From the IMG/VR virus record IMGVR_UViG_3300045973_000169, positions 1-64,000 of that record: a DNA stretch of 64,000 nt; one strand, 5' to 3'. Shown piece by piece: positions 14,839-57,927 of this stretch. Below the pieces are notes generated by a model. The model was not told the DNA's origin. It did no database searches and saw only the letters and a program-made list of their open reading frames with translations. Position numbers and translations under genes: made by a program. Positions within the stretch are counted from its first letter, which is position 1. The number at the start of each line of letters is the position of its first letter.

Positions 14839-14841
14839 ACT

Positions 14842-23719: not shown

Positions 23720-23806
23720 GCCTCTATGGTGGAATTGGTAGACACAAGGGACTTAAAATCCCTCGACAGTAATGTCGTCCCAGTTCGACTCTGGGTAGGG
23801 GCACCA
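23720..23806 (+). tRNA. tRNA-Leu(TAA)
   Basis: GCCTCTA/TAGGGGC acceptor stem, D-loop GG, anticodon loop CTTAAAA, long variable arm, GTTCGAC T-loop, CCA end. Confidence 0.93.
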
Positions 23807-23828
23807 CTCTTACACGAAAGGAGATACA

Positions 23829-31322: not shown

Positions 31323-31397
31323 GGGTCTCTCTTCCAGTGTGCAGGAAGATCCGCTCATAACGGATTAAGTAGAGTTCGATTCTCTAGGGACCCACCA
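31323..31397 (+). tRNA. tRNA with CAT anticodon (Met or Ile2)
   Basis: GGGTCTC/GGGACCC acceptor, ATCCG-CTCATAA-CGGAT, TAGAG-TTCGATT-CTCTA, ACCA. Confidence 0.85.
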
Positions 31398-31530: not shown

Positions 31531-31868
31531 ATAAAAGGAGACGTATGGCAACAAAAGAATTATATATAGTTATTGTGAATGGAGGAGATGGGAGTTATTC
31601 TTCTCAATATACATTCAATAAAGAGTTCATAGATAAAATGGAAAAGATGGAAGCTGAAAGTGATCCTGATTTTGATTATGAAAGTTATTCTGATGGTGAT
31701 GGTTTCCACTATGATGTGTTAACTGTTCCTGAAGAATGTACTCTTGAATCACTTGGGGTCACTTATGATTTTGCAAAGGATTGGTAAATGTCATTTGCAG
31801 GTTGTGGTGAATGTGGACAAGTATGTATGTCTCCATGCATTATGCTATTTTTGATGAAGGAGAATAAA

Positions 31869-32282
31869 GTGTTACATGTTGGATTTACTGGTACTCAGTC
31901 AGGGATGACAGAGCAACAGTATAAAATAGTAAGTGGTTTGCTTCGTCAGCTTAAACCAACTCATGCTCATCATGGTGATTGTGTTGGAGCAGATGCTGAT
32001 TTTCATAACATCTGCAGAAGTATGCAAACAAAGATACAAATGGTAGGACATCCTCCTATTAAAAAGAATAAACGTGCTAATTGTGAGTTTGATATTCTTC
32101 GTGAGACTAAAGAGTATCTTGTTCGCAATCATGACATTGTTGATGAATCAACCATAATGGTTTCTACCCCATTTGGTCCTGAAGAACTTCGATCCGGAAC
32201 ATGGTCGACTATTCGTTATGCAAAAAGAAAAAAAGTTAAACTCTACATTGTATGGCCTGATGGCCGAATTGAGGAACACTGA
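31869..32282 (+). CDS. SLOG superfamily (YspA/DprA-like) nucleotide-binding protein
   Basis: VGFTG, HGDCVGAD, RNHDIVD, SGTWSTIRYA; AAGGAG SD before GTG 31869. Confidence 0.75.
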   Translation: MLHVGFTGTQSGMTEQQYKIVSGLLRQLKPTHAHHGDCVGADADFHNICRSMQTKIQMVGHPPIKKNKRANCEFDILRETKEYLVRNHDIVDESTIMVSTPFGPEELRSGTWSTIRYAKRKKVKLYIVWPDGRIEEH

Positions 32283-35600: not shown

Positions 35601-36977
35601 ATGGCTGCAAAATATACATTAACAGAAAATGGGGCTAAGACCCTATCCGATAGTGGCAATCCTTTAGTGAATTTGTTTTTTACTATTGGGTCTGCTCGTA
35701 ATAACCCTGAAGTAACAAGAGCTAACTTTAAGAAAGCTTTTGAGTTTGATGCATTGAGAGCTTCTGCTATAGTTCTTTGTGCTCGTGATATTCGTCATAA
35801 TGGTATGGGCGAACGTCAGATCTTTCGTACGCTTCTTAAAGACATGGCTGGTAGTGGTAAGATCTATACTCAGAAGATAGTTGAGCTTATCCCTGAGATT
35901 GGCCGTTTTGATGACCTCAAAGCAGTTGAAGGTACTGTTTATGAGAAGATGGCTATTGATATCTTTGCTAAGGCTATCCGTGAGCGTAATGTTCTTGCTG
36001 CTAAATGGGCAAAGCGTGAAGATAAGAAACTTCAGTTAGCTTTAGGGCTGAATGAAGCTGGACTCCGTAAGCTCTTAGCATCAATTCGCAAAGAGCATAT
36101 CGTTGAGGCCAAGATGTGTCTTAAGGACTGGAAATCTATCGAGTATGGTAAAATTCCTTCAGTTGCTGGTACACGTTATTCAAAAGCATTTCATAAGAAT
36201 GATGGTATTCGTTATCGTGCTTTCATTGATAACCCTGATACTAAGGTGAATGCATCTGCTTCTTTCCCTTATGATGTATATCGTATGTGGAGTAGCAGAA
36301 CTTGTCAGCCTCCTGAGATTAACAAGTATTGGAATAATCTGAAAGAGCTTGAGCTTTCAGGTAGTGTCCTTGCTATTGTTGATACATCAGATTCTATGAC
36401 TTGGTTTAAGGTTGCTGGTAGCCTTGTTCCAAGGGATATTGCTGTATCATTGGGCGTCTACTGTGCTCAGAAGATTGAGGGTAAGTTCAAGAATAATATG
36501 ATGACCTTCAATTCTAACCCTGAGTTCTTTACATTGCCTACAGGTGATGTATGTCAGGCATTTGATAAGGTAATGAGATCCAATATTGGTGGCAGTACTA
36601 ACATTCAGAAAGCTTATGAGAAGATTCTTTCCATGGCTCAGACTGTTAATGCTACTGATAAGGATATGCCTAAGTTCATCCTTATTATATCTGATATGCA
36701 GTTTAATGGCTGCACAGATAGACCTTCTGATACTGTCTATGACAATATGAGAAAGAAATATAAGGCTGCTGGATTCACTATGCCTAAAGTGATATTCTGG
36801 AATATGGATGCTCGTCATGATCAGTATCCTACTGCTTCATTTCAGAAAGAAACTGCTTTAATTAGTGGTTTTAGTCCTAATATTCTCAAGGCAGTTCTTA
36901 AGGGGCAAGATGTTGTTATCACCCCTGAAGGAATAATGAATGAGGCAATTGCTCCATTCATTGAGATGTTAAAATAG
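35601..36977 (+). CDS. DUF2828-family helical + vWA (MIDAS) protein, Ro60/TROVE-like by inference
   Basis: TENGA, RDIR..G.GER..FR, G..DDL, LAAKW..RE, MIDAS DTSDS, ISDMQF, VIFWN, SGFSP. Confidence 0.8.
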   Translation: MAAKYTLTENGAKTLSDSGNPLVNLFFTIGSARNNPEVTRANFKKAFEFDALRASAIVLCARDIRHNGMGERQIFRTLLKDMAGSGKIYTQKIVELIPEIGRFDDLKAVEGTVYEKMAIDIFAKAIRERNVLAAKWAKREDKKLQLALGLNEAGLRKLLASIRKEHIVEAKMCLKDWKSIEYGKIPSVAGTRYSKAFHKNDGIRYRAFIDNPDTKVNASASFPYDVYRMWSSRTCQPPEINKYWNNLKELELSGSVLAIVDTSDSMTWFKVAGSLVPRDIAVSLGVYCAQKIEGKFKNNMMTFNSNPEFFTLPTGDVCQAFDKVMRSNIGGSTNIQKAYEKILSMAQTVNATDKDMPKFILIISDMQFNGCTDRPSDTVYDNMRKKYKAAGFTMPKVIFWNMDARHDQYPTASFQKETALISGFSPNILKAVLKGQDVVITPEGIMNEAIAPFIEMLK

Positions 36978-37968: not shown

Positions 37969-38439
37969 ATGAAAGGTAATAAAAAGATCATCGAGACTCT
38001 GAACACAAGACTTGGAGAAGAGTTAACAGCTATTCACCAATATGTAGTTCATTCTCAAATGGTAGAAAATTGGGGCTATAGTAAACTTTCTAAGTATATT
38101 ATGGACCGAGCAAAAGATGAGATGCGCCATGCAGAAATGCTTATGGAACGTATTGTATTCCTTGAAGGTGCACCAGATACAACTAAATTGGGACCTATTG
38201 CAATTGGGCCTAAAGTACCTGATATGTTCAAAAATGATCATTCATCAGAAGTAACAGCAATAAAGAATTATAATGAAAGTATTAAACTTGCAGTAGCTGA
38301 AGGAGATAATGGAACAAGAGAAATCTTAGAGTCTATTCTTCGTGATGAAGAAGGTCACATTGATGCTATCGAAGCCAATCTTTCTCAGCTTGAACAAATG
38401 GGAACTCAGATTTATCTTGCTGAACAACTAGAGGACTAA
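37969..38439 (+). CDS. bfr: Bacterioferritin
   Basis: MKG...ELTAIHQY..H...NWG, DEMRHAE (heme Met), FLEG, DEEGHID ferroxidase ligands. Confidence 0.93.
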   Translation: MKGNKKIIETLNTRLGEELTAIHQYVVHSQMVENWGYSKLSKYIMDRAKDEMRHAEMLMERIVFLEGAPDTTKLGPIAIGPKVPDMFKNDHSSEVTAIKNYNESIKLAVAEGDNGTREILESILRDEEGHIDAIEANLSQLEQMGTQIYLAEQLED

Positions 38440-39593: not shown

Positions 39594-40508
39594 ATGTTTA
39601 GTAAAATTCAAGTATTCCAAGGAGAAAATCCTGATGTTTGGAAGTATGTATTTGAGAAAGATGATATATGTGTAGAAGCTGTTCTCTATAGATATGAGTC
39701 TTTTCAGAAACGTACTGTTCTTTGTATATCAGTCCAGAGTGGTTGTCCTGTTGGATGTGTATTCTGTGGTACTGGTAAGAAGTTTATTCGTAATTTAACT
39801 GCTGATGAAATACAATATCAAGTTGACCATGTAATTAATTGGGTTTCGTCTCAGATTGATTGGCCTCTTAACTCTGTTTGTGAAAAATTTCAGATTATGT
39901 TTATGAGTATGGGTGAGCCTATGCTTAACTGGTCTGAAGTAGATAAAGCAATTCGTAGATTGAATGATACATATCGTAATGCTCAATTGCTTATTTCAAC
40001 TATTGGAGTTAAGGACTACAGTGCATTTTTTAAACTATGTGATCTATCTCGTGAAATAGGTAAAGTTGGCTTACAGTTCTCTTTACATTCAGGTGATGAT
40101 GAAGAAAGAGATGAAATTATCCCATTTAAAAACAAGATGTCTATTCGTGAAATTAGAGATGCTGGTATTATGTGGAATAGTTATACTCATAGACCAGTTT
40201 ACTTGAATATATGTGTGGATGAATTTAATCTTTCTCCTGAAGAACGTGAGAGGATTAAGGATTTGTTTCCCCCAAGTATATTTAGTCTTACGTTCTCTGT
40301 TATATGCGAATATGAGAATGGACAAGTAGTTAACCAAACTTTGAAAGATAAGATTGATAGGAAGATGCAAAATATCATGGCTAACTTCCTTTGTCATAGT
40401 TATAATGTTCGTAAGTTTGATCCTGCTGGACAAGATGATATTGGGGCTGGTTGTGGTCAACTTTGGTACACTCAATCATGGATGAAGGAACATTTTAAAG
40501 GTAAGTAA
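39594..40508 (+). CDS. RlmN/Cfr-family radical SAM RNA methyltransferase-like protein
   Basis: CISVQSGCPVGCVFCGTG (CxxxCxxC), MSMGEP, QFSLH, DIGAGCGQL. Confidence 0.85.
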   Translation: MFSKIQVFQGENPDVWKYVFEKDDICVEAVLYRYESFQKRTVLCISVQSGCPVGCVFCGTGKKFIRNLTADEIQYQVDHVINWVSSQIDWPLNSVCEKFQIMFMSMGEPMLNWSEVDKAIRRLNDTYRNAQLLISTIGVKDYSAFFKLCDLSREIGKVGLQFSLHSGDDEERDEIIPFKNKMSIREIRDAGIMWNSYTHRPVYLNICVDEFNLSPEERERIKDLFPPSIFSLTFSVICEYENGQVVNQTLKDKIDRKMQNIMANFLCHSYNVRKFDPAGQDDIGAGCGQLWYTQSWMKEHFKGK

Positions 40509-40843
40509 GATGGAAAAAGTTAAATGTGATTCATGTAAGGAAACTTTTACAATTAATATGTGGAGAGGTTATCTTAACCTTGAATATAATAGTGAATTAG
40601 AGGCATATGAAACAGTATGTCCTCATTGTGGGCATAAAGGATCATAAATGTTAACATTTTGTTTAATAGTTTTAATAGTTTATCTAACTCCTACTTTATT
40701 ACTTTTAGCACTTTGTGTGTATTTAAGAACAATAGCTAAAGCAGATATTGATATAACACTTAAGAATACATTTAGTTGGTCTTTTGCTTGGCCCTGGTGG
40801 GTAATTATAGGGTTGATTGAAGACTTTAAAAGGAGAAGAGAAA

Positions 40844-41671
40844 ATGATTCTAATTGATAATAGAGAAGTTAAGTTTGGTAAGTTTCCAAACGGTGAAAGT
40901 AATCTGAACTATAACACTATCGAATTCTGTCATGATAGTGATGTTATTCTTAAGTTTGAGTCTGATATTGATTTATTTAATCTTTATATTCTCAAGAAGT
41001 ATATGGATTCTTGTATTTGCTATAATAAGATTTCATTAAAGGTTCTTTATTTCCCTTACTCACGTATGGATAGAGAGAATGATTTCTATACTTTTAATCT
41101 TAAGTATGTTGCTCAGATGATTAATGATATGAACTTCTATGAAGTTATTGTTGGGGATATACATTCAGATGTAGCTCCTGCTTTAATCAATAACTATACT
41201 GGATATTCTTCTATTGATATTCTGTTTGAAACATTCAGAGATGAAATTGGTATTTCTGATTTTAGTATTATGTTCCCTGATGCTGGTGCACAGAAACGTT
41301 ATGGAACTGGCTTTGCTTATCATACTCTTGTTGGATTTAAAGAGCGTGATTTTAGTGATGGGCGTATCCTTGGAATGAAAGTCTTTGGTGATGTACATCC
41401 TGGGAAGCCTGTTGTTATCATTGATGATTTATGTTCTAAAGGTGGAACATTTATTGGAGCAGCCAAAGCTTTGAAAGAAGCTGGTGCTGGTGATATCTAT
41501 CTTATTGTTGGACATTGTGAGAATACTATTGATGAAGGAGCTGTCTTTACATCTGGACTCATTAAGAAGGTCTATACTACTGATAGTATCTATAGTAATC
41601 CTACAACTATTTGGAATACTTCTGATAGATTGTATGTCCATAAACTAATTGTACATGAAAAGAGATACTGA
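40844..41671 (+). CDS. Ribose-phosphate pyrophosphokinase-like (probable Adps, NARP1)
   Basis: FPNGE, YFPYSRMDR, DIHS, FPDAGA, IIDDLCSKGGTF, YTTDS. Confidence 0.88.
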   Translation: MILIDNREVKFGKFPNGESNLNYNTIEFCHDSDVILKFESDIDLFNLYILKKYMDSCICYNKISLKVLYFPYSRMDRENDFYTFNLKYVAQMINDMNFYEVIVGDIHSDVAPALINNYTGYSSIDILFETFRDEIGISDFSIMFPDAGAQKRYGTGFAYHTLVGFKERDFSDGRILGMKVFGDVHPGKPVVIIDDLCSKGGTFIGAAKALKEAGAGDIYLIVGHCENTIDEGAVFTSGLIKKVYTTDSIYSNPTTIWNTSDRLYVHKLIVHEKRY

Positions 41672-42156
41672 TGAATATAATTCAATCTCCTAAGAATACA
41701 AATGGATATGAAGTATATTCAATGTTTCTTGCTGGTGGTATATCTGGTTGTGATGATTGGCAGAAGTATGTATGTAATCAATTAGTTGAGCTATATAAGC
41801 CAAATGATGAAGTTTATATATTTAATCCTCGTAGAAAAGGCGACTTAACTAAAGAAGGAGCAATGGCTAGGAAACAAATTCTTTGGGAGTATAAGTATTT
41901 ACAATTATGTGATTTTTATGCATTTTGGTTTCCACAAGAAACATTATGTCCAATAACTTTATTTGAATTAGGAAAATACGCTAATTGTAATGCTGTTGTT
42001 GGTATTCATCCTGATTACAAAAGAAGATTTGATCTTGAAATTCAGCTCCCTTTAATAAGTAAAAAGATTAAGATCGTTTATGACCTTGATGAATTTGTTG
42101 AAGCTATTGCAGAAAAAATGTTATTAGAAAGGAAAGATAATGGAGAATGTAATTAG
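41671..42156 (+). CDS. Nucleoside 2-deoxyribosyltransferase-like protein
   Basis: FLAGGI..C.DWQ, FNPRR, QILWE, FWFP.ET.CPITLFELG. Confidence 0.8.
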   Translation: MNIIQSPKNTNGYEVYSMFLAGGISGCDDWQKYVCNQLVELYKPNDEVYIFNPRRKGDLTKEGAMARKQILWEYKYLQLCDFYAFWFPQETLCPITLFELGKYANCNAVVGIHPDYKRRFDLEIQLPLISKKIKIVYDLDEFVEAIAEKMLLERKDNGECN

Positions 42157-42622
42157 ATTTTATGGTAAGAGTAAACCTTTCTTTGAAGGTAGTAACTTTT
42201 ATCCTGCAAAATTTAAAGATAGTGCTGGTACTATATGGGATACAACTGAACATTATTTTCAGGCTATGAAGTTTGAAGCTGGATCTGAAATTCAAATTGG
42301 ACCAGAAAGCTTTATCCCAATTCGTAAGCATATACATGATCAGCCTACTCCTATGAAAGCAGCAAACGAAGGACGTAGGAGAGATTTTCCACTCCGTAGT
42401 GATTGGGAACAAGTAAAAGACCAAATGATGTATAATGCATTACGTTATAAGTTTACACAGAATCCAGTATGTAAACAGGCTCTTCTTGATACTGGTGATG
42501 CTGAGTTAATTGAAGCTTCTCCTGTTGATTATTACTGGGCAGAAGGTGCAGATGGTACAGGCAAGAATATGCTTGGTAAACTGTTAGTTAAATTACGAGA
42601 GGAGATCAGAAATGAACAATAA
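42140..42622 (+). CDS. NADAR (YbiA-like) protein
   Basis: SNFY, TEHYFQAMKF, R.DW..VK..M...L..KF.QN, LIEASP.D.YW, G.N.LG. Confidence 0.9.
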   Translation: MENVIRFYGKSKPFFEGSNFYPAKFKDSAGTIWDTTEHYFQAMKFEAGSEIQIGPESFIPIRKHIHDQPTPMKAANEGRRRDFPLRSDWEQVKDQMMYNALRYKFTQNPVCKQALLDTGDAELIEASPVDYYWAEGADGTGKNMLGKLLVKLREEIRNEQ

Positions 42623-44261
42623 GTTATTAGCTGTATTAGCATGTGATGGATATAAGATTGGTCATAAAGATCAAGATGCTCCTGGCGTTGAAAATAAGTA
42701 TTATACATGGACTCCTCGTTCAAACAAATATCTTCCTGAAGTTGAGAAGGTAGTTGTCTTTGGTGTTCAAGGTTTTATTAAGATTCATCTTCTTCAGTTC
42801 TTCAATGAGAACTTCTTTGAATTAGATAAAGAGTATGTTGTCTTTGAATACAAGCGTATTCTTAAATCATACTTGTTCAAAGAGGAGATTGATACAACTC
42901 ATATTGAGGAACTGCATGACTTAGGTTACTTGCCTTTAAAGATTAAAGCTATTAAAGAAGGGATAAGAGTCCCAATCAGAACTCCTGTTTTAACTGTTGA
43001 GGTTACTAATGGGAAATTTGCATGGTTGGGTGGATATATTGAAGATATTCTTTCTACTTCTCTTTGGCAGCCAATGACTGTTGCTTCTATTGCTTATGAG
43101 TATAAGAAACTCTTTAAAGAGTTTGCAATGGAAACTGTAGGAAATACTGAATTCTGTAAGTTCCAAGGTCATGACTTTAGTTATCGTGGCTTGATGGCTG
43201 GTCTTGATGCTATTCAGGCTTCAGGTTCAGCTTGGTTACCTTTGTTTGTTGGAACAGATAATATTCCATCTATTCCTTATATGGAAAATGTCTATGGAGC
43301 TGATAGCTCTAAAGAGATTATTGGGTGTAGTGTACCTGCTTCTGAACACAGTGTAGCTGAGACCTATATGGAATTTGATGATGATGGCAATCTTATCCCT
43401 GGTTGGGAAGATGAATATCTCCGTAGATTGATTGTTGATATTTATCCTACTGGGATTGTTTCAATTGTAGCAGATACAATTGATCTCTTTGAGCTTATTA
43501 CTGTTAAGTTAGTTGCTCTTAAAGAAATCATTATGGCTCGTGATGGTAAGACTGTCATTCGTCCTGATAGTGGCAACCCTGCTGATATCCTTTGTGGATA
43601 TGTTATTAAGAAATTAAATAACCCACTTAATGGTGATGCTGATAAGTACTATCTTCCTTTTGATCGTTGGACTGATGATGGATTTAATGCTTACCAGACT
43701 ACTGATGGAAAAGTTTATAACTTTGATCATAAAGAATTATCTATTGCTGAAACTAAAGGTGTAGTTGAACTTCTTTGGGAGATCTTTGGTGGAACTATCA
43801 ATGCCAAAGGATACAAAGAATTAGACTCACACATTGGTACTATCTATGGTGATTCTATTACTATTTCTTTAGCTAGAGAGATCTGTAAAAGACTTAAAGC
43901 TAAAGGCTTTGCTAGTACTAACTGGGTTGCTGGTGTTGGTAGTTACAGCTTGTTAGGACAGTTAAGTCGTGATAGTCTTGGATTTGCACTTAAAGAGACC
44001 TCTATTACTAGAAATGGTAAAGAGATAGCTGTCTTTAAGGATCCTAAGACTGATGATGGAACTAAGAAATCAGCTAAAGGACGTGTAGTAGTTGTACCTT
44101 CTCCTATTGGTGATGGTTCAATGCGTACTATTGATAACCTTACCAAAGAACAGGAAGAAAAGGTTGGAGCTTTCAACTTACTCCAGACTGTATTTGAAGA
44201 TGGTGTATTGCCTGCAGAAACAACATTAGCAGATATTCGTATTTGTTTAGGTGGAATTTAA
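42612..44261 (+). CDS. Nicotinamide phosphoribosyltransferase-like (probable Namat, NARP1)
   Basis: DGYK.GH, HDFSYRG, SVPASEHSV, SIVADT, IRPDSG, IYGDSIT, KDPKTD...KKSAKG. Confidence 0.9.
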   Translation: MNNKLLAVLACDGYKIGHKDQDAPGVENKYYTWTPRSNKYLPEVEKVVVFGVQGFIKIHLLQFFNENFFELDKEYVVFEYKRILKSYLFKEEIDTTHIEELHDLGYLPLKIKAIKEGIRVPIRTPVLTVEVTNGKFAWLGGYIEDILSTSLWQPMTVASIAYEYKKLFKEFAMETVGNTEFCKFQGHDFSYRGLMAGLDAIQASGSAWLPLFVGTDNIPSIPYMENVYGADSSKEIIGCSVPASEHSVAETYMEFDDDGNLIPGWEDEYLRRLIVDIYPTGIVSIVADTIDLFELITVKLVALKEIIMARDGKTVIRPDSGNPADILCGYVIKKLNNPLNGDADKYYLPFDRWTDDGFNAYQTTDGKVYNFDHKELSIAETKGVVELLWEIFGGTINAKGYKELDSHIGTIYGDSITISLAREICKRLKAKGFASTNWVAGVGSYSLLGQLSRDSLGFALKETSITRNGKEIAVFKDPKTDDGTKKSAKGRVVVVPSPIGDGSMRTIDNLTKEQEEKVGAFNLLQTVFEDGVLPAETTLADIRICLGGI

Positions 44262-44590: not shown

Positions 44591-45466
44591 TTGTTTGAAC
44601 TTTTAAATTCGATAGTTATCCCAGATACTAAGATTAAGTTTAAGCATATCTTAATGGGAATTTTTATTTTCTTTACTCTTATCCTTACAAACTGTTCTTT
44701 CAGACGTGTCAAAATTGATGCCGGTGAACAGGGAGTAATTGTATCTCAACCTTATATCTTTGGTTCTGGTGGAGTAAGTGACACAGTTCTTCATACTGGT
44801 GGTTATTGGGTTTGGAAATCTAATGCTGTTTATGGGATTAGAATTCTTCCTCAGCAGGTATCAGAAGACTTTAAGGATATGATGTCTGGTGATAGTATCC
44901 CTGTGCAGTTTGATGCTCATTTGAATTATAGGATTATTGATCCTGTTGTTTATTGGAGATCTTGGGGTGAGCATTGGTATTCTTCTAATATTCAACAGAC
45001 CTTTAGGACTGTAGCTCGTGATGAGTGTAAGCGTTATACTATGTCTAGTCTTATTACAAATCCTGATACTACAAGGGCTATTGAGCTTAAAATTCTAGAA
45101 GCAGTCCAGAAATATGCTGCTGAAAAGAAAATGCCAATTGAATTTACAAAAGTAAATATTGGTAAGATCAATCCTAAAGATGATGTAATGGCCGAGATTG
45201 GACAGACTGCTGTACAGCAACAGAGACAACGTACAGAGCTTGATCGTAAGAAAGCAGAGGATAACCGTAGGATGACAGAAGTCTCTAGGGCTGCTGCTGA
45301 TAATGCTTATCGTGAAGCTATGAATCTTGCACCTGAACAATATATTCGTCTTGAAGCTGTTAAGGCTTATTCTCATGCTGCAGAGGAATGTGCTAAGAAT
45401 GATAAATGTACAATGATCCTTACTCAGCCTGGGAATGAAGTTAAAGCAACTATCCCAGCTCGTTAA
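44591..45466 (+). CDS. SPFH/band 7/prohibitin domain membrane protein
   Basis: N-terminal TM, 'IDAGEQGV', SPFH core, Ala/Glu-rich coiled coil. Confidence 0.8.
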   Translation: MFELLNSIVIPDTKIKFKHILMGIFIFFTLILTNCSFRRVKIDAGEQGVIVSQPYIFGSGGVSDTVLHTGGYWVWKSNAVYGIRILPQQVSEDFKDMMSGDSIPVQFDAHLNYRIIDPVVYWRSWGEHWYSSNIQQTFRTVARDECKRYTMSSLITNPDTTRAIELKILEAVQKYAAEKKMPIEFTKVNIGKINPKDDVMAEIGQTAVQQQRQRTELDRKKAEDNRRMTEVSRAAADNAYREAMNLAPEQYIRLEAVKAYSHAAEECAKNDKCTMILTQPGNEVKATIPAR

Positions 45467-46671: not shown

Positions 46672-47172
46672 ATGAATTTAATATTAAAAGCATTAAGATT
46701 TGCAGAAAATAAACATAAAGGACAGACACGTAAGGTTACTGGAGAAGAGTATTTTGTACATCCTTTAATGGTAAGTTATATTGTAGCTAACTATAAGATG
46801 TCTCAGAACTTAGAGATACTTATTGTAGCTGCTATCTTGCATGATACAGTTGAAGATACAGATACTACTTTTGAAGAGATACTTAAAGAGTTTGGTATGT
46901 TTGTAGCTACATTAGTATTTGAACTTACAGATGATAAGGCTAAGAAAAGGAAGTTAGGAAACTTAGAGTATTGTAAATTGAGATGGTGTGGTCTATCTAA
47001 CTATGCTTTATATCTTAAACTATGTGATAGACTTTACAATATGTCTGATCATCCTACTAAAGAACAACAAGATACTACACTTCTTATACTTGATCATGTT
47101 GAGAGTAAACGTAAATTAACATTATCTCAACAGCGTGTTGTATTTGAAATAAGAAAGGTGATAAATGGTTAA
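46672..47172 (+). CDS. HD-domain RelA/SpoT-type (p)ppGpp hydrolase-like (Mesh1/SAH)
   Basis: FA..KHKGQTRK..Y..HP..V, AAILHDTVEDT, LTDDK, KLCDR..N. Confidence 0.85.
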   Translation: MNLILKALRFAENKHKGQTRKVTGEEYFVHPLMVSYIVANYKMSQNLEILIVAAILHDTVEDTDTTFEEILKEFGMFVATLVFELTDDKAKKRKLGNLEYCKLRWCGLSNYALYLKLCDRLYNMSDHPTKEQQDTTLLILDHVESKRKLTLSQQRVVFEIRKVING

Positions 47173-47701
47173 AGATATTTATGTATTAGTTGGAGCTGCT
47201 GCTCACGGTAAGAGTACATGGGCTGGAAGTAAGACAACTGAATATTTTGCTAAGTGGATGGATGAAAGATCTAAAAATCCAAGTCAAACTGGATCTTATG
47301 GATATGTAAATGCTGATATGATTAGGAAGCAGCTTTATGGTGATCCTACTATCCAAGGTGATGGCAATGAAGTATTTGGTAAAGTGTTTGAAGCTTATAC
47401 TGGGTTCTTAAGAAACAAGGCAGTTGATTTAATTATTGTAGACAATACATCTCTTAAAGTTAGAGATAGAAAAAGATATTATACATTGGCTCAAACTATA
47501 TGTGAAGCTATGGGTTATGCTTTTAATTATCACCTTGTATTTTTCCCACCTCATTTTGAGAGAGCTTTAGTTTGGAATAAGCAAAGGAATCGTCAGGTTC
47601 CAGAAGATGTTATTGCAAGACATTGTGCTGTATATCAAGGACCAAGTGAATTTGAAAGAGAAAATTGTATAATCGAGACTGTTATACACAAAGAAAGGTA
47701 A
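47165..47701 (+). CDS. Polynucleotide kinase-like P-loop protein (AAA_33)
   Basis: GAAAHGKST, DMIR, VDNT, RxRxVP. Confidence 0.8.
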   Translation: MVKDIYVLVGAAAHGKSTWAGSKTTEYFAKWMDERSKNPSQTGSYGYVNADMIRKQLYGDPTIQGDGNEVFGKVFEAYTGFLRNKAVDLIIVDNTSLKVRDRKRYYTLAQTICEAMGYAFNYHLVFFPPHFERALVWNKQRNRQVPEDVIARHCAVYQGPSEFERENCIIETVIHKER

Positions 47702-49349: not shown

Positions 49350-49928
49350 ATGAAGAATAAAAGAGTTTGTGTAGATTTAGATAATACACTATGTGATTTA
49401 ACTGGTTATGTTTGTGATGAAATTAATTTAGGATTAGGATTAGCTGATCCGGTATTTAATCAACGTATTGAAACATATAATTATCTACAAAATACTTATG
49501 GAGCTTGGATAGAAGAATTTTGGACTACTCCTGGAATTTATGATAAACATATTAAACCATTAGAAGGTTCAATAGAATTTATTAGAGAACTTATCGCTAT
49601 AGTAGGTAGATTCAATGTATCTATTGTAACAGCGACTCCAAAAGGGCTTGAAGAAGAAAAGAAACAATTTTGTTTCAAGAACTATGGGATTAGTAATGTT
49701 ATATGTACCCATGAGAAATGGAAGCATACTAAAGGAGCTATTCTTATAGATGATTATTGGAAACATTGTATGGATCATTTATTACAGAATGATGATCCTT
49801 GTATTTTGTTTAACTATGAAAATGATTATCCTTATGCTGATGCTAAGTATATTACTTTCCCAATAACCAATAAGTTACATAGAGCTGATTCTTATAAGAA
49901 AGTATTAGAGATTATAAAGGAGAAATAA
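49350..49928 (+). CDS. 5'(3')-deoxyribonucleotidase (HAD)
   Basis: VDLDNTL, IVTA, K...ILIDD. Confidence 0.82.
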   Translation: MKNKRVCVDLDNTLCDLTGYVCDEINLGLGLADPVFNQRIETYNYLQNTYGAWIEEFWTTPGIYDKHIKPLEGSIEFIRELIAIVGRFNVSIVTATPKGLEEEKKQFCFKNYGISNVICTHEKWKHTKGAILIDDYWKHCMDHLLQNDDPCILFNYENDYPYADAKYITFPITNKLHRADSYKKVLEIIKEK

Positions 49929-49929
49929 C

Positions 49930-50652
49930 ATGGCACGTTATGCTATAAGTGACATACATGGTTGTTTAAGAACCTTTAAGAAAGTGTTACGTTCAGTTGA
50001 CTTTAATAAGAGCGATACGCTTATATTACTAGGTGATTATATTGATAGAGGGTTAGACTCTAAAGGTGTTATTCAATACATTATTGATCTTATTGCAGAA
50101 GGCTATGATGTTATTCCTTTGTGTGGGAATCATGAACAATTCCTTATAGAGTCTATTGGTAATAATGCAGTTCAAACTATGTGGGAACGTAATGGTGGAG
50201 ATAAATGCCTTAGAAGTTATGGTGTTAATCATCCTAGTTTAATGCCACATGAACATATAAGTTTTATAAGATCTTTACCTCTTATGCATGTTGAAAGAGA
50301 TTATGTCTTTGTTCATGCAGGGTTAGATTTCTGTAAAGAAGATCCTATTGAAGAATCAAGTGATGAGACTATTCTTTGGAGTAGGATGCATCGCCTTGCT
50401 GGAGATTCACGTAGGAAGAAACTTGGTGGAAGAGTCTTGGTTACAGGACATACTCCTACAGATAAGAAAACAATGATTACAATGGCTATGGGTGAAGATA
50501 TGATTACTATTGACAGAGGCTGTGTCTTTGAAGGATCTAATTATAACCATATGGCTATTTTTAATCTAGATACAAAACAGTTTAATTTTATTAAAAATAT
50601 TGATACTTTAGAAAATGATTGGGTGAGTAGACATGGATATGCAGGACGATAG
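49930..50652 (+). CDS. Ser/Thr protein phosphatase family metallophosphoesterase
   Basis: SDIHG, LGDYIDRG, GNHE, FVHAG, GHTP, ID.GC. Confidence 0.9.
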   Translation: MARYAISDIHGCLRTFKKVLRSVDFNKSDTLILLGDYIDRGLDSKGVIQYIIDLIAEGYDVIPLCGNHEQFLIESIGNNAVQTMWERNGGDKCLRSYGVNHPSLMPHEHISFIRSLPLMHVERDYVFVHAGLDFCKEDPIEESSDETILWSRMHRLAGDSRRKKLGGRVLVTGHTPTDKKTMITMAMGEDMITIDRGCVFEGSNYNHMAIFNLDTKQFNFIKNIDTLENDWVSRHGYAGR

Positions 50653-51070
50653 GCTTTTAGTTCATATGAATTATAGAAAATATACACCTGAAAACATTGT
50701 CAGTCTAGAGCCAAATGAAGTGTTTGTCTTCGGTAGCAATACCGAAGGCATTCACGGAGCTGGTGCTGCTAGAGCTGCATTGGATTTGTTTGGTGCTAAG
50801 TTTGGACAAGCAGAAGGATTACAAGGTCAGTCTTATGCTATTGTAACTAAAGATCTTGAATTAGGTATGAGGAGTATCCCTCTTGGAGATATATGTAAAA
50901 GTATATTTAAATTCCTTGAGTTTGCTAAAGAGAATGGAGATAAAATTTTTTATGTAACTAAATTAGGTTGCGCTTTAGCTGGATATTCTATTGATGAAAT
51001 AGGTAAGCTTTTTATGGGATTTAATATTCCGAATAATGTTGTTTTACCAGTTGAATTTTGGGAGTGTTAG
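50633..51070 (+). CDS. Macro-domain-like protein (A1S_2505-type)
   Basis: VFVFGSN..G.HGAGAA, GLQGQSYAI.T, VT.LGC.LAG. Confidence 0.75.
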   Translation: MDMQDDRLLVHMNYRKYTPENIVSLEPNEVFVFGSNTEGIHGAGAARAALDLFGAKFGQAEGLQGQSYAIVTKDLELGMRSIPLGDICKSIFKFLEFAKENGDKIFYVTKLGCALAGYSIDEIGKLFMGFNIPNNVVLPVEFWEC

Positions 51071-51429: not shown

Positions 51430-52167
51430 ATGATAGGTGAAAAGTTTGGTAAGTTAACAGTTGTCTATTTCAATGATTTAAATAAGAGAAAAGAGAAACT
51501 ATGGTTATGTCTTTGTGATTGTGGAAAAGAAATAATTGTAAAAACAAGAAATCTTAAAATTGGAGCAACAAAAAGTTGTGGTTGTTTATCAACAGGCCCA
51601 AAAATTTCTGATCTTACTGGGAATAAATTTGGTGATTTAGAAGTTATATCTTATGCACATCAAGATAAATGGAGAACAAGTTTTTGGAATTGTAGATGTA
51701 TTTGTGGTAATTATACTGTTGCTAGTTCCGCAAATCTTAAATCTGGAAATCGTATTTCTTGTGGATGTAAACATGATGAATGGAAACATAATAAACCAAA
51801 AGGTCAAGATAGTCCACATTGGAATTCAGATATAATTGATAGAAATAGCAGACGACTTGACTATGAAGCAAAAGACTGGGCAATAAGAATTAAAGAACGT
51901 GATAAATATAAGTGTTTAGTTTGTGGTAAATCTCCAAGTGGAGAACTAACAAGTCATCATCTATATAGCTATAATGACTATATAGATTTAAGATATGATA
52001 TTGATAATGGAATTACTTTATGCGAGCAATGTCATTATTCTTTCCATAAAAAATATGGATTCAAAAAGAACACAAAAGAACAATTTAAGGAGTGGAAAAA
52101 TGAGTTATATGGCAGTAATAGCACGGTTGAAGAATGTCCGTGCTCATCCGAATGCAGACCGGATTAA
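51430..52167 (+). CDS. HNH homing endonuclease (paralog of 8141-8854)
   Basis: WLCLCDCG..KSCGC and WNCRCICG..SCGC; RDKYKCLVCG..SHH..NGITLCEQCH. Confidence 0.88.
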   Translation: MIGEKFGKLTVVYFNDLNKRKEKLWLCLCDCGKEIIVKTRNLKIGATKSCGCLSTGPKISDLTGNKFGDLEVISYAHQDKWRTSFWNCRCICGNYTVASSANLKSGNRISCGCKHDEWKHNKPKGQDSPHWNSDIIDRNSRRLDYEAKDWAIRIKERDKYKCLVCGKSPSGELTSHHLYSYNDYIDLRYDIDNGITLCEQCHYSFHKKYGFKKNTKEQFKEWKNELYGSNSTVEECPCSSECRPD

Positions 52168-53470
52168 ATTAGCTAATTGTTTAGGCTATCAAGTTATTGT
52201 AGGGCTTGAGGCTAAAGATGATGATATTGTTATTTTATTTCCTGATGATGGGCAATTAAGTCATGAATATATTTTTAATAATAACCTATATAACAAAGCA
52301 GAGATGAATAAAGATCCTAGTGTTAAAACTGGATTCTTTGATCATAAACGTAGAGTAAGATGTCAGACATTTAGAGGAGAGAAAAGTGAAGCTTATACTG
52401 CTGATATCAGAAGCGTGGAATTTACTGGGGTTGATATTGAAAGTCTCTATGTGGGTGTCCGTTTTGATGTTCTTAATGATATTAGCATTTGCAATAAGTA
52501 TATAACTCAAGCCACTAAGGATGCTGCTAATAAGAATGGGAATAAAGATAAGGTTAAACTTAATGTTATTCTTAAGAAAATGTTCCCTGAGCATATAGAT
52601 ACTGAACAGATTAGATTTGCAAGAGATGAAGATCTAATTGGATTAGTTACTATTACTCATAAGCTTCATGGTACAAGTGCTAGAACTGGATATATTAATA
52701 CTCCTGTTGAAGTACCTTTAAAATGGTATCATAAACTTTGGAATCAGTATGTTAAGTTAGTTGACTATCTCCCTCCTAAGTATACTCACGAGCAGAATGA
52801 AGCTTTATATTTTGCTCCTACTACTATCAAGAAATGGAAAACTATTTTTGGTACACGTAGGGTAATTAAAGGTCCTGTTAATGAAGAAGCAACTGATTAT
52901 CGTTCTTTATGTGCTAAACGATTAGCTCCTTTTATTGAAAAGGGTGAAATCTGGTATTATGAAATTGTAGGGTATGAAGATACTGGTGCTCTTATTATGG
53001 GGAGTGTTTCTACTAAAGAAATGCCTAAAGAATTCCAAAAAAGGTTTGGTGAAACTATTACTTACAAGTATGGTTGCTTACCTGGGACATGGAATATTTA
53101 TGTTTATCGTATTACTCATCAGAATGAAGATGGTGTTATCTATGAACTTCCATGGGCACAAGTAAAAGCTAAATGTAATAATGCTGCTATTAAGCATGTT
53201 CCTGAAATTGATGTTATTTTAACAGAAGTAGCTTTAGATGGTACAATTGATGTTGAAGTTTTAAAGCAAACAATTGAACATTACACTGAAGATGAAGATA
53301 TTGCTGAACCCCTTGATGCTTCTCATATACGTGAAGGTATCTGTGTTAGGATTGATAATCTTGAGACTGGTAAAATGAAAATATTCAAGAATAAAACTTT
53401 TGTATTTAAGGTGCTTGAAGGTATTGTTAAGGATTCTGGTGTAGTTGATACAGAAGAAGCTGAAGGGTAG
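52100..53470 (+). CDS. RNA ligase, Rnl2/DRB0094-like, with N-terminal tRNA-binding OB-like domain
   Basis: HPNADR, motif I KLHGTS, YEIVG, REGICV, K.K.F.F; AAGGAG SD before ATG 52100. Confidence 0.85.
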   Translation: MSYMAVIARLKNVRAHPNADRIKLANCLGYQVIVGLEAKDDDIVILFPDDGQLSHEYIFNNNLYNKAEMNKDPSVKTGFFDHKRRVRCQTFRGEKSEAYTADIRSVEFTGVDIESLYVGVRFDVLNDISICNKYITQATKDAANKNGNKDKVKLNVILKKMFPEHIDTEQIRFARDEDLIGLVTITHKLHGTSARTGYINTPVEVPLKWYHKLWNQYVKLVDYLPPKYTHEQNEALYFAPTTIKKWKTIFGTRRVIKGPVNEEATDYRSLCAKRLAPFIEKGEIWYYEIVGYEDTGALIMGSVSTKEMPKEFQKRFGETITYKYGCLPGTWNIYVYRITHQNEDGVIYELPWAQVKAKCNNAAIKHVPEIDVILTEVALDGTIDVEVLKQTIEHYTEDEDIAEPLDASHIREGICVRIDNLETGKMKIFKNKTFVFKVLEGIVKDSGVVDTEEAEG

Positions 53471-57169: not shown

Positions 57170-57563
57170 ACCAGCTTACAAGATGAAAAATAATGCCGAA
57201 CAGAAAGTAATTGTTACTGCATTAAAAACAATGGGTTTCAAAATATTAAGTGCTGATATGGAAATAGCTAAATATTTAAAAGATAATCCTGCAACTGATA
57301 ATCATTATATTTGGGTTCAACTTACTGATTCAGGTTGGATTATTAATGGATGTAATTTTATGGGAAGCAGGAAAGAAGTCTCTCTTGGAGAATTTCTTGC
57401 TAATGCCGCTGAATCTATACTCAAAAATAGAGTTATTGAAGTGAAACTTAACAGTAATTATAAGGCAGAAGTAACTAAAGATAGTGTTGTAGTCGGTTGC
57501 CAGACATTTACACATAAAGCTATTAAAGAACTTTATAACGCTACCCTTGAAGTTCAGAAATGA
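57159..57563 (+). CDS. Hypothetical protein, paralog of 54828-55232
   Basis: Shared C-terminal motif. Confidence 0.6.
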   Translation: MANEPAYKMKNNAEQKVIVTALKTMGFKILSADMEIAKYLKDNPATDNHYIWVQLTDSGWIINGCNFMGSRKEVSLGEFLANAAESILKNRVIEVKLNSNYKAEVTKDSVVVGCQTFTHKAIKELYNATLEVQK

Positions 57564-57927
57564 AACGTTTGAGAGAAGGTTTTACTTTTACACAAGACCA
57601 ATCAATAGGTATGACTTGTAGAGTAGAAAATAATGAAGTTGTCCTTATCCCTTATATAAGAGAGACTGGACAACTTCTATTTAGATGGATGGCAGAATAT
57701 GAAATTAAATAAAATAAAAGAATCAGGGATCTATTTAGTTATAGGACCACCTGAATGTGTTTCTTTGTTACCTACTGAAAATATATTATTTCTTTATCCT
57801 AATGGTGATCTTGTTATGGAAGGTAATAATTATATGGATTGTTTAAATGATGGTGAAGATGAGATAATTGAAGTTATCTGTCTTGCTAAATCAGAGAACC
57901 ATCCATCTTTGAGAGAAGGTGTTTTTG

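What the first reader, a model, noticed from the sequence alone, without database searches (positions are those of the whole stretch)
40844..44261. NARP1-type NAD reconstitution operon extended by an NDT-like and a NADAR gene
Known: phage Prs-like Adps plus Nampt-like Namat rebuild NAD+ from ADP-ribose to counter NAD-depleting defences (Thoeris, DSR, SIR2-HerA). Seen: two further translationally coupled genes lie between them, a nucleoside deoxyribosyltransferase-like protein and NADAR. Inference: they may free ADPR from ADP-ribosylated targets or degrade signal nucleotides, giving an extended four-gene pathway. SLOG (31869) and macro-like (50633) genes add to this theme.
Basis: partly seen in the sequence, partly recalled or inferred. 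Interest (0 to 1): 0.6.

Follow-up and report, generated by a model that had tools for sequence, protein, structure and literature searches.

The report
NAD-rebuilding phage operon with two extra glycosidases
A 207-kb phage carries the known two-gene pathway that rebuilds NAD+ from its breakdown products, with two sugar-base bond-cutting enzymes wedged inside it. One of them belongs to an unstudied enzyme family that turns up beside every known kind of phage NAD-rebuilding gene set.

Summary
Four overlapping + strand genes fill 40844-44261: an Adps-like gene, a nucleoside-deoxyribosyltransferase-like gene (PF15891), a YbiA-type NADAR, and a Namat-like gene.

Adps and Namat are 41-51% identical to the tested FADO and SPbetaL1 enzymes. 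The genome has no NMNAT or Nudix gene, so NARP1 is its only NAD route.

The same four genes recur in an unrelated short contig with the two inner genes swapped. A third contig has Adps-NDT-small ORF-Namat.

The new point concerns the NDT-like clade, whose only solved relative is the uncharacterised 4MCJ. It is not tied to NARP1. In about 30% of 160 viral and metagenomic loci it lies beside NAD genes of four kinds: NARP1, Nampt/NadM, PnuC/NadR and PncA/PncB/NadE/NadK.

By analogy with the published NARP1 accessories (Macro phosphatase Adpp, RyDEP), I think the two enzymes most likely cut N-linked ribosyl bonds of NAD-derived molecules. That would disarm them and return ADP-ribose to the pathway. 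The substrate is not shown, and a nicotinamide- or ribose-5-phosphate-releasing role fits nearly as well.

Verdict: a new variant of a known system, directly testable.

The parts
40844..41671 (+). Adps-like gene (ADP-ribose pyrophosphokinase of the Prs fold), 275 aa
   Evidence: It is 41-43% identical to the Adps of phages FADO and SPbetaL1, both tested experimentally. It shares their PP-loop variant DDLxSxGGTF and the hairpin K166/R168; in my recollection (not tested here) canonical PRPS carries a DDxxDTxGT loop at this point. phrog_619 scores 2.7e-67. Canonical PRPS structures match only at E about 1e-8.
41671..42156 (+). NDT-like N-glycosidase or transglycosidase of an uncharacterised PF15891 clade, 161 aa
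   Evidence: PF15891 scores 9.3e-17. There are 678 homologues, with invariant motifs FxAGGI, NPRR, QIxWE, ETxCPIxLxELG and YxRxxDxExQ. The AF2 model has pLDDT 92.3. The nearest structures are 4MCJ (uncharacterised), then MilB and RCL/DNPH1, which are NMP N-glycosidases. Its neighbourhoods are dominated by NAD-salvage genes.
42140..42622 (+). NADAR, YbiA subfamily, 160 aa
   Evidence: PF08719 scores 7.7e-34. TIGR02464 scores 119.7 bits against a cut-off of 73.7. The best solved relative is E. coli YbiA 2B3W at 2.9e-28, against 2.4e-8 for the DarT1-type 8BAU. The SNF, TEHYFQAMK and last-strand Glu (LIEAS) motifs are kept.
42612..44261 (+). Namat-like nicotinamide (ADP-)ribosyl transferase with an atypical adenine-clamp helix, 549 aa
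   Evidence: It is 49-51% identical to the FADO, SPbetaL1, Thrax1 and W.Ph Namats, against 27% to a NadM-linked Nampt. The best PDB hits are 9W5X/9W5W, whose aligned stretches match the SPbetaL1 Namat sequence, at 1.5e-139; human NAMPT scores about 1e-48. The clamp motif reads GVGSYSLLGQLSRD instead of GS[FY][TS][YF]Q[YF]xTRD. Only L178 shares this variant.
40648..40857 (+). Small hydrophobic ORF (69 aa) overlapping the Adps start by 14 nt; upstream link of the coupled gene chain
   Evidence: ORF list and sequence. No Pfam or PHROG hit.
39594..40508 (+). RlmN/Cfr-like radical-SAM gene, a recurrent neighbour of the NAD genes; its role in the module is unknown
   Evidence: PF04055 scores 2e-8. 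TIGR00048 RlmN scores 3.4e-31 but lies far below its cut-off. Homologues lie beside NAD genes in the P0016 contig, L108 and L160 and, weaker, L093.

Best explanation
This is a NARP1 NAD+-reconstitution operon. Adps would make ADPR-PP from ADP-ribose and ATP, and Namat would join it to nicotinamide to give NAD+.

Two N-glycosidase-family genes have been inserted into the operon and retained. One is a member of an uncharacterised PF15891 (DrHyd/NDT-fold) clade. The other is a YbiA-type NADAR.

My best reading is that both are accessory enzymes of the NAD/ADP-ribose network. They would cut N-linked ribosyl bonds of NAD-derived molecules that the two core enzymes cannot use. The NDT-like enzyme would act on ring-nitrogen linkages, for example N-linked cyclic ADPR, histidine-ADPR or pyridine nucleotides. 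NADAR would act on exocyclic-amine linkages, for example ADP-ribosylated guanine or cytosine. This would disarm a host signal or modification and return free ADP-ribose, or a free base, to the pathway.

Shown: the gene anatomy, family membership, conserved catalytic motifs, recurrence of the module, and the general linkage of the NDT-like clade to NAD-salvage genes.

Inferred: every substrate and product, and the coupling to Adps and Namat.
For: **Core pathway**
- Adps and Namat are 41-51% identical to experimentally validated enzymes, and Adps has their PP loop.
- The genome has no NUDIX, NMNAT, NAD-dependent ligase or Macro gene, so no alternative NAD route exists.

**Retention of the inserts**
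- L178/L179 carry Adps (54% identical), NADAR (33%), NDT (54%) and Namat (68%). The inner order is swapped and the starts overlap.
- L125 has Adps-NDT-60 aa-Namat.
- NDT-NADAR lie adjacent again in L221.
- The four NARP1-linked NDT genes sit in four different places of an 89-row tree. Well-supported branches force at least two independent events.

**Link of the NDT-like clade to NAD**
- 24 of 80 IMG/VR loci and 23 of 80 JGI loci carry NAD genes within 5-7 kb.
- In an unbiased clustering of 990 neighbouring ORFs, the four most recurrent clusters are NMNAT, PncA, Adps/Prs and Nampt/Namat.
- The domain is fused to an ADP-ribosyltransferase in phage Tunturi_5. It lies beside DUF4326 and NADAR and near TIR genes in a cyanobacterial genome assembled from a metagenome (MAG).

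**Chemistry**
- The family keeps an invariant Glu in the LFELG motif. I take it for the catalytic nucleophile by analogy with the NDT/DNPH1 motif; no residue-level alignment to those enzymes was made. An invariant NPRR pair suggests a phosphorylated ribosyl substrate.
- The fold is nearest to the NMP N-glycosidases MilB and DNPH1.
- NADARs hydrolyse N-glycosidic ADP-ribose on guanine and cytosine (PMC11543638, PMC12945103).

**Precedent**
- Adpp and RyDEP are accessory genes inside NARP1 operons that convert ADPR-1''-phosphate or 2'/3'-cADPR to ADP-ribose (10.64898/2026.01.28.702374; 10.64898/2026.05.28.727677).
Against: - No assay was possible, and no substrate is identified.
- The NDT-like gene is absent from all 74 NARP1 loci retrieved through Adps.
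- It accompanies pathways that do not obviously use ADP-ribose, such as PnuC/NadR in L221. A pure 'feeder of Adps' role is therefore too narrow.
- ADP-ribose released from DNA adducts or signals would be tiny compared with the NAD pool.
- About 70% of NDT-like loci show no NAD gene nearby, although many of those contigs are short.
- Several NAD-linked loci come from related jumbo phages, so they are not all independent.
- The Namat clamp variant leaves open whether this enzyme prefers ADPR-PP.
Confidence: 0.42

Rival explanations
1. Pyridine or ribose-phosphate salvage role. The NDT-like enzyme is a nucleotide N-glycosidase for small metabolites. It would cut NMN, NaMN or NR to release nicotinamide, or AMP and other NMPs to release ribose-5-phosphate. 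This would supply base or sugar-phosphate to whichever NAD route the phage has. NADAR would be an unrelated neighbour.
For: - The fold is nearest to the NMP N-glycosidases MilB and DNPH1, and the family has an invariant Arg-Arg pair.
- The gene is often directly adjacent to nicotinamide users. These are PncA at d=0 in five IMG/VR loci, and Nampt or Namat in L011, the P0016 contig, L140, L108 and L125.
- It sits in full Preiss-Handler clusters next to NadK, alongside NadE and, in L016, NrtR.
- CD38 is grouped by Aravind's group in the same DrHyd superfamily as the NDT fold (PMC9503650). It has NMN glycohydrolase and base-exchange activity (PMC11903787).
- AMP is a by-product of Adps, Nudix, NadE and Prs.
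Against: - An NMN hydrolase beside Nampt, NadM or NadR would undo their product. The gene is directly adjacent to NadM in L177, L183, L210 and L234.
- This role does not explain the repeated pairing with NADAR and DUF4326, the fusion to an ADP-ribosyltransferase, or the TIR neighbours.
Confidence: 0.27
2. Independent counter-defence genes that merely share an early-gene island. NADAR would be an AdfN-like enzyme removing DarT1-type ADP-ribose from phage DNA. The NDT-like protein would have some other nucleotide-directed role. Neither would be metabolically coupled to Adps and Namat.
For: - Phage NADARs from three lineages neutralise DarTG1 on their own (PMC11825919).
- Other NARP1 operons carry unrelated inserts between Adps and Namat. 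Thrax1 has four hypothetical genes and W.Ph an HNH endonuclease.
- The window around the operon is a mixed island of RNA-repair and nucleotide genes.
- NDT-like genes also sit beside Thg1 and RNA ligase.
Against: - The same two families recur inside a second NARP1 operon in swapped order with overlapping starts.
- NDT-NADAR also lie adjacent in a PnuC/NadR cluster.
- The top neighbour clusters of the NDT-like clade are all NAD genes.
- The window's NADAR is the YbiA type. E. coli YbiA has the DNA activity in vitro but does not protect against DarT1 (PMC11125620).
Confidence: 0.22
3. Not NARP1 at all. A true PRPP synthetase plus a true Nampt would make NMN, which the host then finishes to NAD+.
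For: The Namat-like protein lacks the second and third aromatic residues of the published adenine-clamp motif. Its motif tail (LLGQLSRD) resembles the Nampt motif GGLLQKxxRD.
Against: - The Prs-like protein has the Adps-type PP loop. It is 41-43% identical to validated Adps, but matches canonical PRPS only at about 1e-8.
- The PRT is 49-51% identical to Namats and 27% to a NadM-linked Nampt.
- No NMNAT gene is present in the genome.
Confidence: 0.07

Closest known systems
NARP1 (Adps + Namat; Osterman et al. 2024, bioRxiv 10.1101/2024.02.11.579819)
   Same: Both have a Prs-like Adps followed on the same strand by a Nampt-like Namat in a phage. The window's proteins are 41-51% identical to the tested FADO and SPbetaL1 proteins. 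Adps has the same PP-loop variant, and the genome has no NMNAT.
   Different: Two further enzyme genes lie between the core genes. The Namat clamp helix deviates from the signature GSXΦXΦXΦTRD and is shared only with L178.
NARP1-AP (Adps-Adpp Macro phosphatase-Namat; bioRxiv 10.64898/2026.01.28.702374)
   Same: An accessory hydrolase gene is inserted in the NARP1 operon. It is presumed to convert a non-canonical NAD breakdown product into ADP-ribose.
   Different: The inserts here are N-glycosidase families (PF15891, NADAR), not a Macro phosphatase. No Macro domain exists in the genome. The expected chemistry is cleavage of a C1''-N bond, not removal of a 1''-phosphate.
RyDEP in the NARP1 locus of mycobacteriophage DyoEdafos (bioRxiv 10.64898/2026.05.28.727677)
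   Same: A glycosidase gene inside a NARP1 locus whose product, ADP-ribose, feeds Adps and Namat.
   Different: RyDEP is an RyR-R12 domain protein that cleaves the O-glycosidic ribose-ribose bond of 2'/3'-cADPR. The families here are unrelated and are expected to act on N-glycosidic bonds.
AdfN phage NADARs and E. coli YbiA (PMC11825919, PMC11125620, PMC11543638)
   Same: Same NADAR fold, with the catalytic Glu, Lys and last-strand acidic residue kept. It is a stand-alone small protein in a phage.
   Different: The window's protein is the YbiA (Glu) type rather than the T4 gp30.3 (His) or DarT1-associated (Asp) type. It sits inside a NAD-reconstitution operon. Its activity is untested.
MilB, RCL/DNPH1 and classical nucleoside 2-deoxyribosyltransferases; PDB 4MCJ
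   Same: Same Rossmann-like NDT/DrHyd fold, with a conserved Glu in a G-x-x-E-x-G-like motif. 4MCJ is a true family member (E = 2.9e-19).
   Different: Only 12-20% identical to the characterised enzymes. It has its own invariant motifs (NPRR, QIxWE, YxRxxDxExQ). Its genomic context is NAD salvage, not nucleoside antibiotic synthesis or dNMP clearance. 4MCJ has no assigned function.

Membership tests
NARP1 | Adps: Prs-fold protein of the phage Adps clade with the remodelled PP loop and the catalytic hairpin Lys | tested here: met
   41-43% identical to FADO and SPbetaL1 Adps. Invariant DDLxSxGGTF, K166 and R168 in alignment A1. phrog_619 at 2.7e-67. Canonical PRPS matches only at about 1e-8. 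Not aligned directly to the structurally studied F1D1Q1 enzyme.
NARP1 | Namat: Nampt-like protein of the Adps-linked clade | tested here: met
   49-51% identical to four Adps-linked Namats against 27% to a NadM-linked Nampt. PDB 9W5X/9W5W (aligned stretches match the SPbetaL1 Namat sequence) at 1.5e-139, against human NAMPT at about 1e-48.
NARP1 | Namat selectivity-clamp helix signature GSXΦ1XΦ2XΦ3TRD with aromatic X (PMC12774641) | tested here: inconclusive
   The window has GSYSLLGQLSRD. The first aromatic residue and Φ1 are kept, the later aromatics are lost, the motif is one residue longer, and it ends SRD instead of TRD. It is an outlier among about 70 Adps-linked Namats. Only L178 shares the variant, as GSYSYLGKLSRD.
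NARP1 | Adps and Namat encoded together; no NMNAT needed | tested here: met
   Same strand and an overlapping gene chain. No CTP_transf_like or NUDIX gene in the 206,638-bp genome.
NARP1 | ADPR to ADPR-PP to NAD+ activity, and rescue from NAD-depleting defences | not testable with these tools
   Needs enzyme assays and plaque assays.
NARP1-AP / RyDEP-type extended NARP1 | Accessory gene is a Poa1p-like Macro phosphatase (Adpp) or an RyR-R12 glycosidase (RyDEP) | tested here: not met
   The inserted genes hit only PF15891 and PF08719. No PF01661 Macro domain anywhere in the genome.
NADAR superfamily, YbiA subfamily | PF08719 domain with catalytic Glu and Lys and a Glu in the last strand | tested here: met
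   PF08719 at 7.7e-34. TIGR02464 above its cut-off. YbiA 2B3W at 2.9e-28. TEHYFQAMK and LIEAS motifs present.
NADAR superfamily, YbiA subfamily | Hydrolysis of N-glycosidic ADP-ribose (guanine or cytosine) or of ribosylamino-pyrimidine phosphates | not testable with these tools
   Needs biochemistry.
Nucleoside 2-deoxyribosyltransferase / DrHyd fold | NDT-type Rossmann-like fold with a conserved Glu at the position of the nucleophile motif | tested here: met
   AF2 model at pLDDT 92.3. Foldseek matches 4MCJ, MilB, RCL/DNPH1 and NDTs. E99 in LFELG is invariant in 40 sequences. That E99 is the nucleophile rests on motif analogy, not on a residue-level alignment.
Nucleoside 2-deoxyribosyltransferase / DrHyd fold | Deoxyribosyl transfer between nucleobases (the classical NDT reaction) | not testable with these tools
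   The protein matches PF15891 and gave no PF05014 hit. It has no NCBIfam hit. The context argues for a different substrate, but no assay was possible.

The most novel reading that the evidence does not exclude
The 4MCJ-like PF15891 clade may be a so far unrecognised, general accessory enzyme of phage NAD+ restoration. It accompanies NARP1, NARP2-type, NARP3-type and Preiss-Handler clusters. It would work as a retaining N-glycosidase or transglycosidase on TIR-made, N-linked ADP-ribose signals such as histidine-ADPR or N-linked cyclic ADPR. It would either release ADP-ribose for Adps or exchange the leaving group directly for nicotinamide, remaking NAD+ without ATP. With NADAR as its partner for exocyclic-amine adducts, the four-gene operon would turn several kinds of host NAD-derived weapons back into NAD+.
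Probability: 0.17. Interest if true: 0.85.

Novelty: new variant of a known kind. Interest (0 to 1): 0.64.

Why it matters
NAD+ depletion and NAD-derived signals are central to bacterial anti-phage immunity. Each accessory gene found so far inside NARP1 operons (Adpp, RyDEP) revealed a new layer of that arms race, and in one case a new defence system.

This analysis points to a compact, abundant and wholly uncharacterised enzyme family. It has 678 homologues, a solved structure without a function, and very strong active-site conservation. Its most consistent genomic partners are NAD-restoring genes of every known type.

Finding its substrate could do one of two things. It could uncover a new way that phages destroy immune signals. 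Or it could fill a missing step in pyridine-nucleotide recycling. NMN glycohydrolase activity, for instance, is an old observation which, to my knowledge, has never been assigned a bacterial gene.

The atypical Namat clamp in this lineage also offers a natural test of the published rule for ADPR-PP selectivity.

Tried and rejected
- Megablast of the operon against 50,697 phage records gave no match.
- Single-sequence pattern scans of IMG/VR with the NDT-like protein and with Adps found no close relatives. Alignment-based scans were needed instead.
- Promoter and terminator scans of 37-46 kb gave fewer or no more sites than shuffled sequence. The inverted repeat in the 93-nt gap after Namat folds no better than shuffles, z = -0.87. 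No transcription boundaries are claimed.
- The 'macro-like' reading of 50633-51070 is rejected. The protein has no Pfam hit and belongs to the A1S_2505 family. None of its structural neighbour clusters in the Atlas carries a Macro family.
- KptA/Tpt1, DUF4326, NAD-dependent ligase, NUDIX and NMNAT were sought in the whole genome and not found. A link to RNA 2'-phosphate removal, and a NARP2 route, are therefore dropped.
- The roughly 50-aa insert after RPDSG in Namat looked special, but it is common in Namats, where this stretch runs from 7 to 116 residues.
- The idea that the NDT-like gene is preferentially next to nicotinamide-using enzymes was weakened by the JGI loci, where NadM is the commonest direct neighbour.
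- Literature searches for PF15891, deoxyribosyltransferase plus NAD+ reconstitution, and the supplements of the aRES paper found no prior mention.
- Burroughs et al. 2015 could not be retrieved under the two identifiers I tried from memory. De Souza and Aravind 2012 was not looked up. Prior notice there cannot be excluded.
- No complex prediction was run, because I do not claim that the proteins bind each other.

Full report
**What is there**

The window is the first 64 kb of a 206,638-bp IMG/VR phage record that CheckV rates complete. Its GC content is about 32%.

Four + strand ORFs fill 40844-44261:
- a Prs-like protein of 275 aa (PF14572; phrog_619 at 2.7e-67);
- a PF15891 'nucleoside 2-deoxyribosyltransferase-like' protein of 161 aa (9.3e-17);
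- a NADAR of 160 aa (7.7e-34);
- a NAPRTase/NAMPT_N protein of 549 aa (phrog_448 at 1.3e-167).

Successive genes overlap by 1, 17 and 11 nt, each behind a purine-rich site.

The coupled chain also extends upstream through two small ORFs to a radical-SAM gene (39594-40508). It ends at a 93-nt gap after 44261. Promoter and terminator scans and a fold of that gap gave nothing above shuffled controls.

**Is the core NARP1?**

The Prs-like protein is 41-43% identical to the Adps enzymes of phages FADO and SPbetaL1. NARP1 from both phages was shown experimentally to rebuild NAD+ (bioRxiv 10.1101/2024.02.11.579819). It shares their PP-loop variant DDLxSxGGTF and the hairpin Lys and Arg. Canonical PRPS structures match only at about 1e-8.

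The large protein is 49-51% identical to four Adps-linked Namats and 27% to a NadM-linked Nampt. Its best solved relatives are 9W5X/9W5W, whose aligned stretches match the SPbetaL1 Namat sequence, at 1.5e-139. Human NAMPT scores about 1e-48.

The genome has no NMNAT, NUDIX, NAD-dependent ligase, KptA, Macro or DUF4326 gene. NARP1 is therefore the only NAD route it encodes.

One defining feature is not cleanly met. The published adenine-clamp helix of Namat is GSXΦXΦXΦTRD with aromatic X (PMC12774641). Here it reads GSYSLLGQLSRD. That keeps only the first aromatic residue, and the tail recalls the Nampt motif GGLLQKxxRD.

Among about 70 Adps-linked Namats from IMG/VR this is an outlier. The only other case is L178, with GSYSYLGKLSRD.

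**The NADAR**

It belongs to the YbiA subfamily:
- TIGR02464 scores above its cut-off.
- E. coli YbiA scores 2.9e-28, against 2.4e-8 for a DarT1-type NADAR.
- The SNF, TEHYFQAMK and last-strand Glu motifs are kept.

Known NADAR activities are hydrolysis of N-glycosidic ADP-ribose on guanine and cytosine, and of ribosylamino-pyrimidine phosphates (PMC11543638, PMC12945103, PMC11125620). Phage NADARs (AdfN) neutralise DarTG1 (PMC11825919).

NADAR next to phage NadV/NadM genes was noted in 2022 (PMC9503650). In my sample, 7 of 74 NARP1 loci have a NADAR within 7 kb. One lies directly upstream of Adps (L055), and none lies between Adps and Namat.

**The NDT-like protein**

It has 678 homologues at E ≤ 0.001, and the listed best hits are 41-53% identical; almost all are metagenomic. 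The family is tightly conserved: FxAGGI, NPRR, QIxWE, ETxCPIxLxELG and YxRxxDxExQ are invariant in 40 diverse members.

The only solved relative is 4MCJ, annotated as a 'putative nucleoside deoxyribosyltransferase' without an assigned function. A confident model (pLDDT 92.3) next resembles:
- MilB, a CMP N-glycosidase;
- RCL/DNPH1, a dNMP N-glycosidase;
- YtoQ and the classical NDTs.

The conserved Glu in LFELG resembles the nucleophile motif of these retaining enzymes. I did not align it to them residue by residue, so its catalytic role is inferred. The Arg pair suggests a phosphorylated ribosyl substrate.

**Where its relatives sit**

This is the main result. Single look-ups gave these neighbourhoods:
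- Nudix-x-Nampt-NDT (L011/L012).
- NadM, radical SAM, HD, DUF5662, NDT, Nampt, Band_7 on a 167-kb contig. These follow the window's gene order, but as a NARP2-type set.
- NadM-x-x-NDT (L014), and NadM directly before NDT (L176/L177).
- NAPRTase-PncA-NadE-radical SAM-NadM-NadK-NDT with NrtR nearby (L016).
- PncB...Nudix-NMNAT-PncA-x-NDT in Sinorhizobium phage Phosso.
- NDT-DUF4326 with a NADAR 3 kb away (L013).
- An NDT domain fused to ART-PolyVal in a 1262-aa protein next to the portal gene of phage Tunturi_5.

Wider scans agree:
- Of 80 IMG/VR loci, 24 carry NAD genes within 7 kb.
- Of 80 JGI loci, many on contigs under 4 kb, 23 do so.
- I clustered all 990 ORFs within 4 kb of the gene across 63 non-redundant groups, without prior labels. 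The four most recurrent clusters were NMNAT, PncA, Adps/Prs and Nampt/Namat. DnaB, radical SAM and NADAR came next.
- L221 adds NDT-NADAR-PnuC-NadR-NadB, a NARP3-type set (NARP3 is described in PMC13464706).

**Recurrence with NARP1**

- L125 has Adps-NDT-60 aa-Namat.
- L163 has NDT-three small ORFs-Adps-Namat.
- L108 has Namat-46 aa-NDT-Thg1-65 aa-NADAR-radical SAM.
- L178/L179 carry Adps (54% identical, with the same DDLCSKGGTF loop), NADAR (33%), NDT (54%) and Namat (68%). Their starts overlap, and the inner order is swapped relative to the window.

On a tree of 89 NDT-like proteins, the four NARP1-linked members then in the set fall in four separate places. Well-supported branches force at least two independent events. 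The window's own clade (95% support) otherwise holds Nampt/NadM-linked genes.

So the NDT-like gene stays with NAD genes while the NAD route beside it changes. Conversely, none of the 74 NARP1 loci found through Adps has it. It is therefore an occasional accessory of NARP1, not a standard part.

**Interpretation**

Two accessory genes inside NARP1 operons have been characterised:
- The Macro phosphatase Adpp converts ADPR-1''-phosphate to ADP-ribose. It occurs in 15% of NARP1 phages.
- RyDEP opens 2'/3'-cADPR to ADP-ribose (10.64898/2026.01.28.702374; 10.64898/2026.05.28.727677).

By analogy, and given two N-glycosidase families with complementary known chemistry (ring-nitrogen against exocyclic-amine linkages), I favour one model. 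The two enzymes would cut N-linked ribosyl bonds of NAD-derived signals or adducts and return ADP-ribose to the pathway (confidence 0.42).

The breadth of the NDT-like gene's partners, including PnuC/NadR, shows that 'feeding Adps' is too narrow.

I hold three rivals:
- A metabolite-level role (0.27). The enzyme would be an NMN, NaMN or NR glycohydrolase, or an AMP or other NMP glycosidase supplying ribose-5-phosphate. This is plausible from the fold, from PncA and Nampt adjacency, and from CD38's NMN activity (PMC11903787). Direct adjacency to NadM and NadR argues against NMN hydrolysis.
- Mere co-location in a counter-defence and RNA-repair island (0.22).
- A true Prs plus Nampt pair (0.07), which I consider unlikely.

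**Side claims and literature**

The 'SLOG' gene (31788-32282) has no Pfam hit, but its Atlas model matches YpsA-type SLOG clusters. I treat this as a supported lead.

The 'macro-like' gene (50633-51070) is an A1S_2505-family protein with no Macro signal.

I found no paper linking PF15891 to NAD reconstitution. Iyer et al. 2022 state that viral DrHyd members are only of the cyclase type. Burroughs et al. 2015 could not be retrieved under the identifiers I tried, and I did not look up de Souza and Aravind 2012.

**Verdict**

- This is a new variant of a known system.
- The broader and apparently unreported lead is a conserved enzyme family that accompanies all known phage NAD-restoration routes.

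Noticed in passing
window 39594-40508: A radical-SAM gene of 304 aa resembles RlmN/Cfr RNA adenine methyltransferases, but scores far below their cut-offs and lacks their N-terminal part. Homologues recur next to NAD-salvage genes in other phage contigs (the P0016 contig, L108, L160; weaker in L093).
   Followed up: partly
window 42612-44261; L178:1395-2912: The Namat clamp helix reads GSYSLLGQLSRD, and GSYSYLGKLSRD in L178, instead of the published Namat signature. It looks like a hybrid between the Namat and Nampt motifs. So far it is seen only in the two operons that also hold NDT and NADAR.
   Followed up: partly
window 35601-36977, 46672-47701, 49350-50652, 51995-53470, 55949-59061: The operon sits in an island of RNA-repair and nucleotide genes. 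These include a phrog_850 'RNA-binding protein' (possibly Ro60-like, not checked), an HD_4 hydrolase and a Pnkp-like kinase. There are also an NT5C-like nucleotidase, an ApaH/PrpE-like metallophosphatase, an RNA ligase, a CCA-adding enzyme and a second nucleotidyltransferase.
   Followed up: partly
window 44591-45466: An SPFH/Band_7 gene follows the NAD module. The same Nampt-Band_7 order is seen in a 167-kb relative, and Band_7 lies near NadM in L014. This suggests conserved synteny.
   Followed up: no
window 31788-32282: This protein has no Pfam hit. Its Atlas model matches YpsA-type SLOG clusters (TM 0.74-0.75) and DprA-like phage clusters.
   Followed up: partly
window 50633-51070: An A1S_2505-family phage non-structural protein (NF049995, 125 bits). 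In other phages the domain is fused to DUF7666, DUF1810 or VWA. It is not a Macro domain.
   Followed up: partly
window 14000-24000: A GC-rich block (43-49% against about 32% elsewhere) contains a 1030-aa ORF (17155-20247) and a 328-aa ORF with no PHROG hit. Gene orientation switches at about 13 kb, and the terminase large subunit lies at 4039-5892 on the - strand.
   Followed up: no
window 23720-23806 and 31323-31397: Two tRNA genes: tRNA-Leu (anticodon taa) and tRNA-Met (anticodon cat).
   Followed up: no
window 37969-38439: A ferritin/Dps-like gene (PF00210, 5.5e-36) lies in the same early-gene array.
   Followed up: no
own genome G000:C1:81731-82144 (L007:1489-1902), outside the window: A second, weak PF15891-like ORF (27.6 bits, below the cut-off) is flanked by two GIY-YIG homing-endonuclease genes.
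   Followed up: partly
L174:1986-5444 and L175 (cyanobacterial MAG): An NDT-like gene, coupled to an unknown 169-aa ORF, lies 1-3 kb from two TIR_2-GUN4 genes. This is a cellular context that hints at TIR-made NAD derivatives.
   Followed up: no
L015:2417-3735 and L108:6986-8292: The NDT-like gene is directly followed by a Thg1-like tRNA-His guanylyltransferase in two unrelated contigs. An RNA ligase is also a recurrent neighbour (L136).
   Followed up: no
L009:3552-4842 (Bacillus phage Thrax1) and L010:3949-4488 (phage W.Ph.): Other NARP1 operons also carry inserts between Adps and Namat. Thrax1 has four hypothetical genes; the 184-aa one, the only one scanned, has no Pfam hit. W.Ph. has an HNH endonuclease.
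   Followed up: partly
L100, L156, L161: A conserved block NADAR-~155 aa-~280 aa (Clp_N-like)-NDT lies a few kb from a Prs-like gene of 328-334 aa. L100 and L161 also carry a DUF4326 gene. The Prs-like gene looks like a canonical PRPP synthetase rather than Adps.
   Followed up: no
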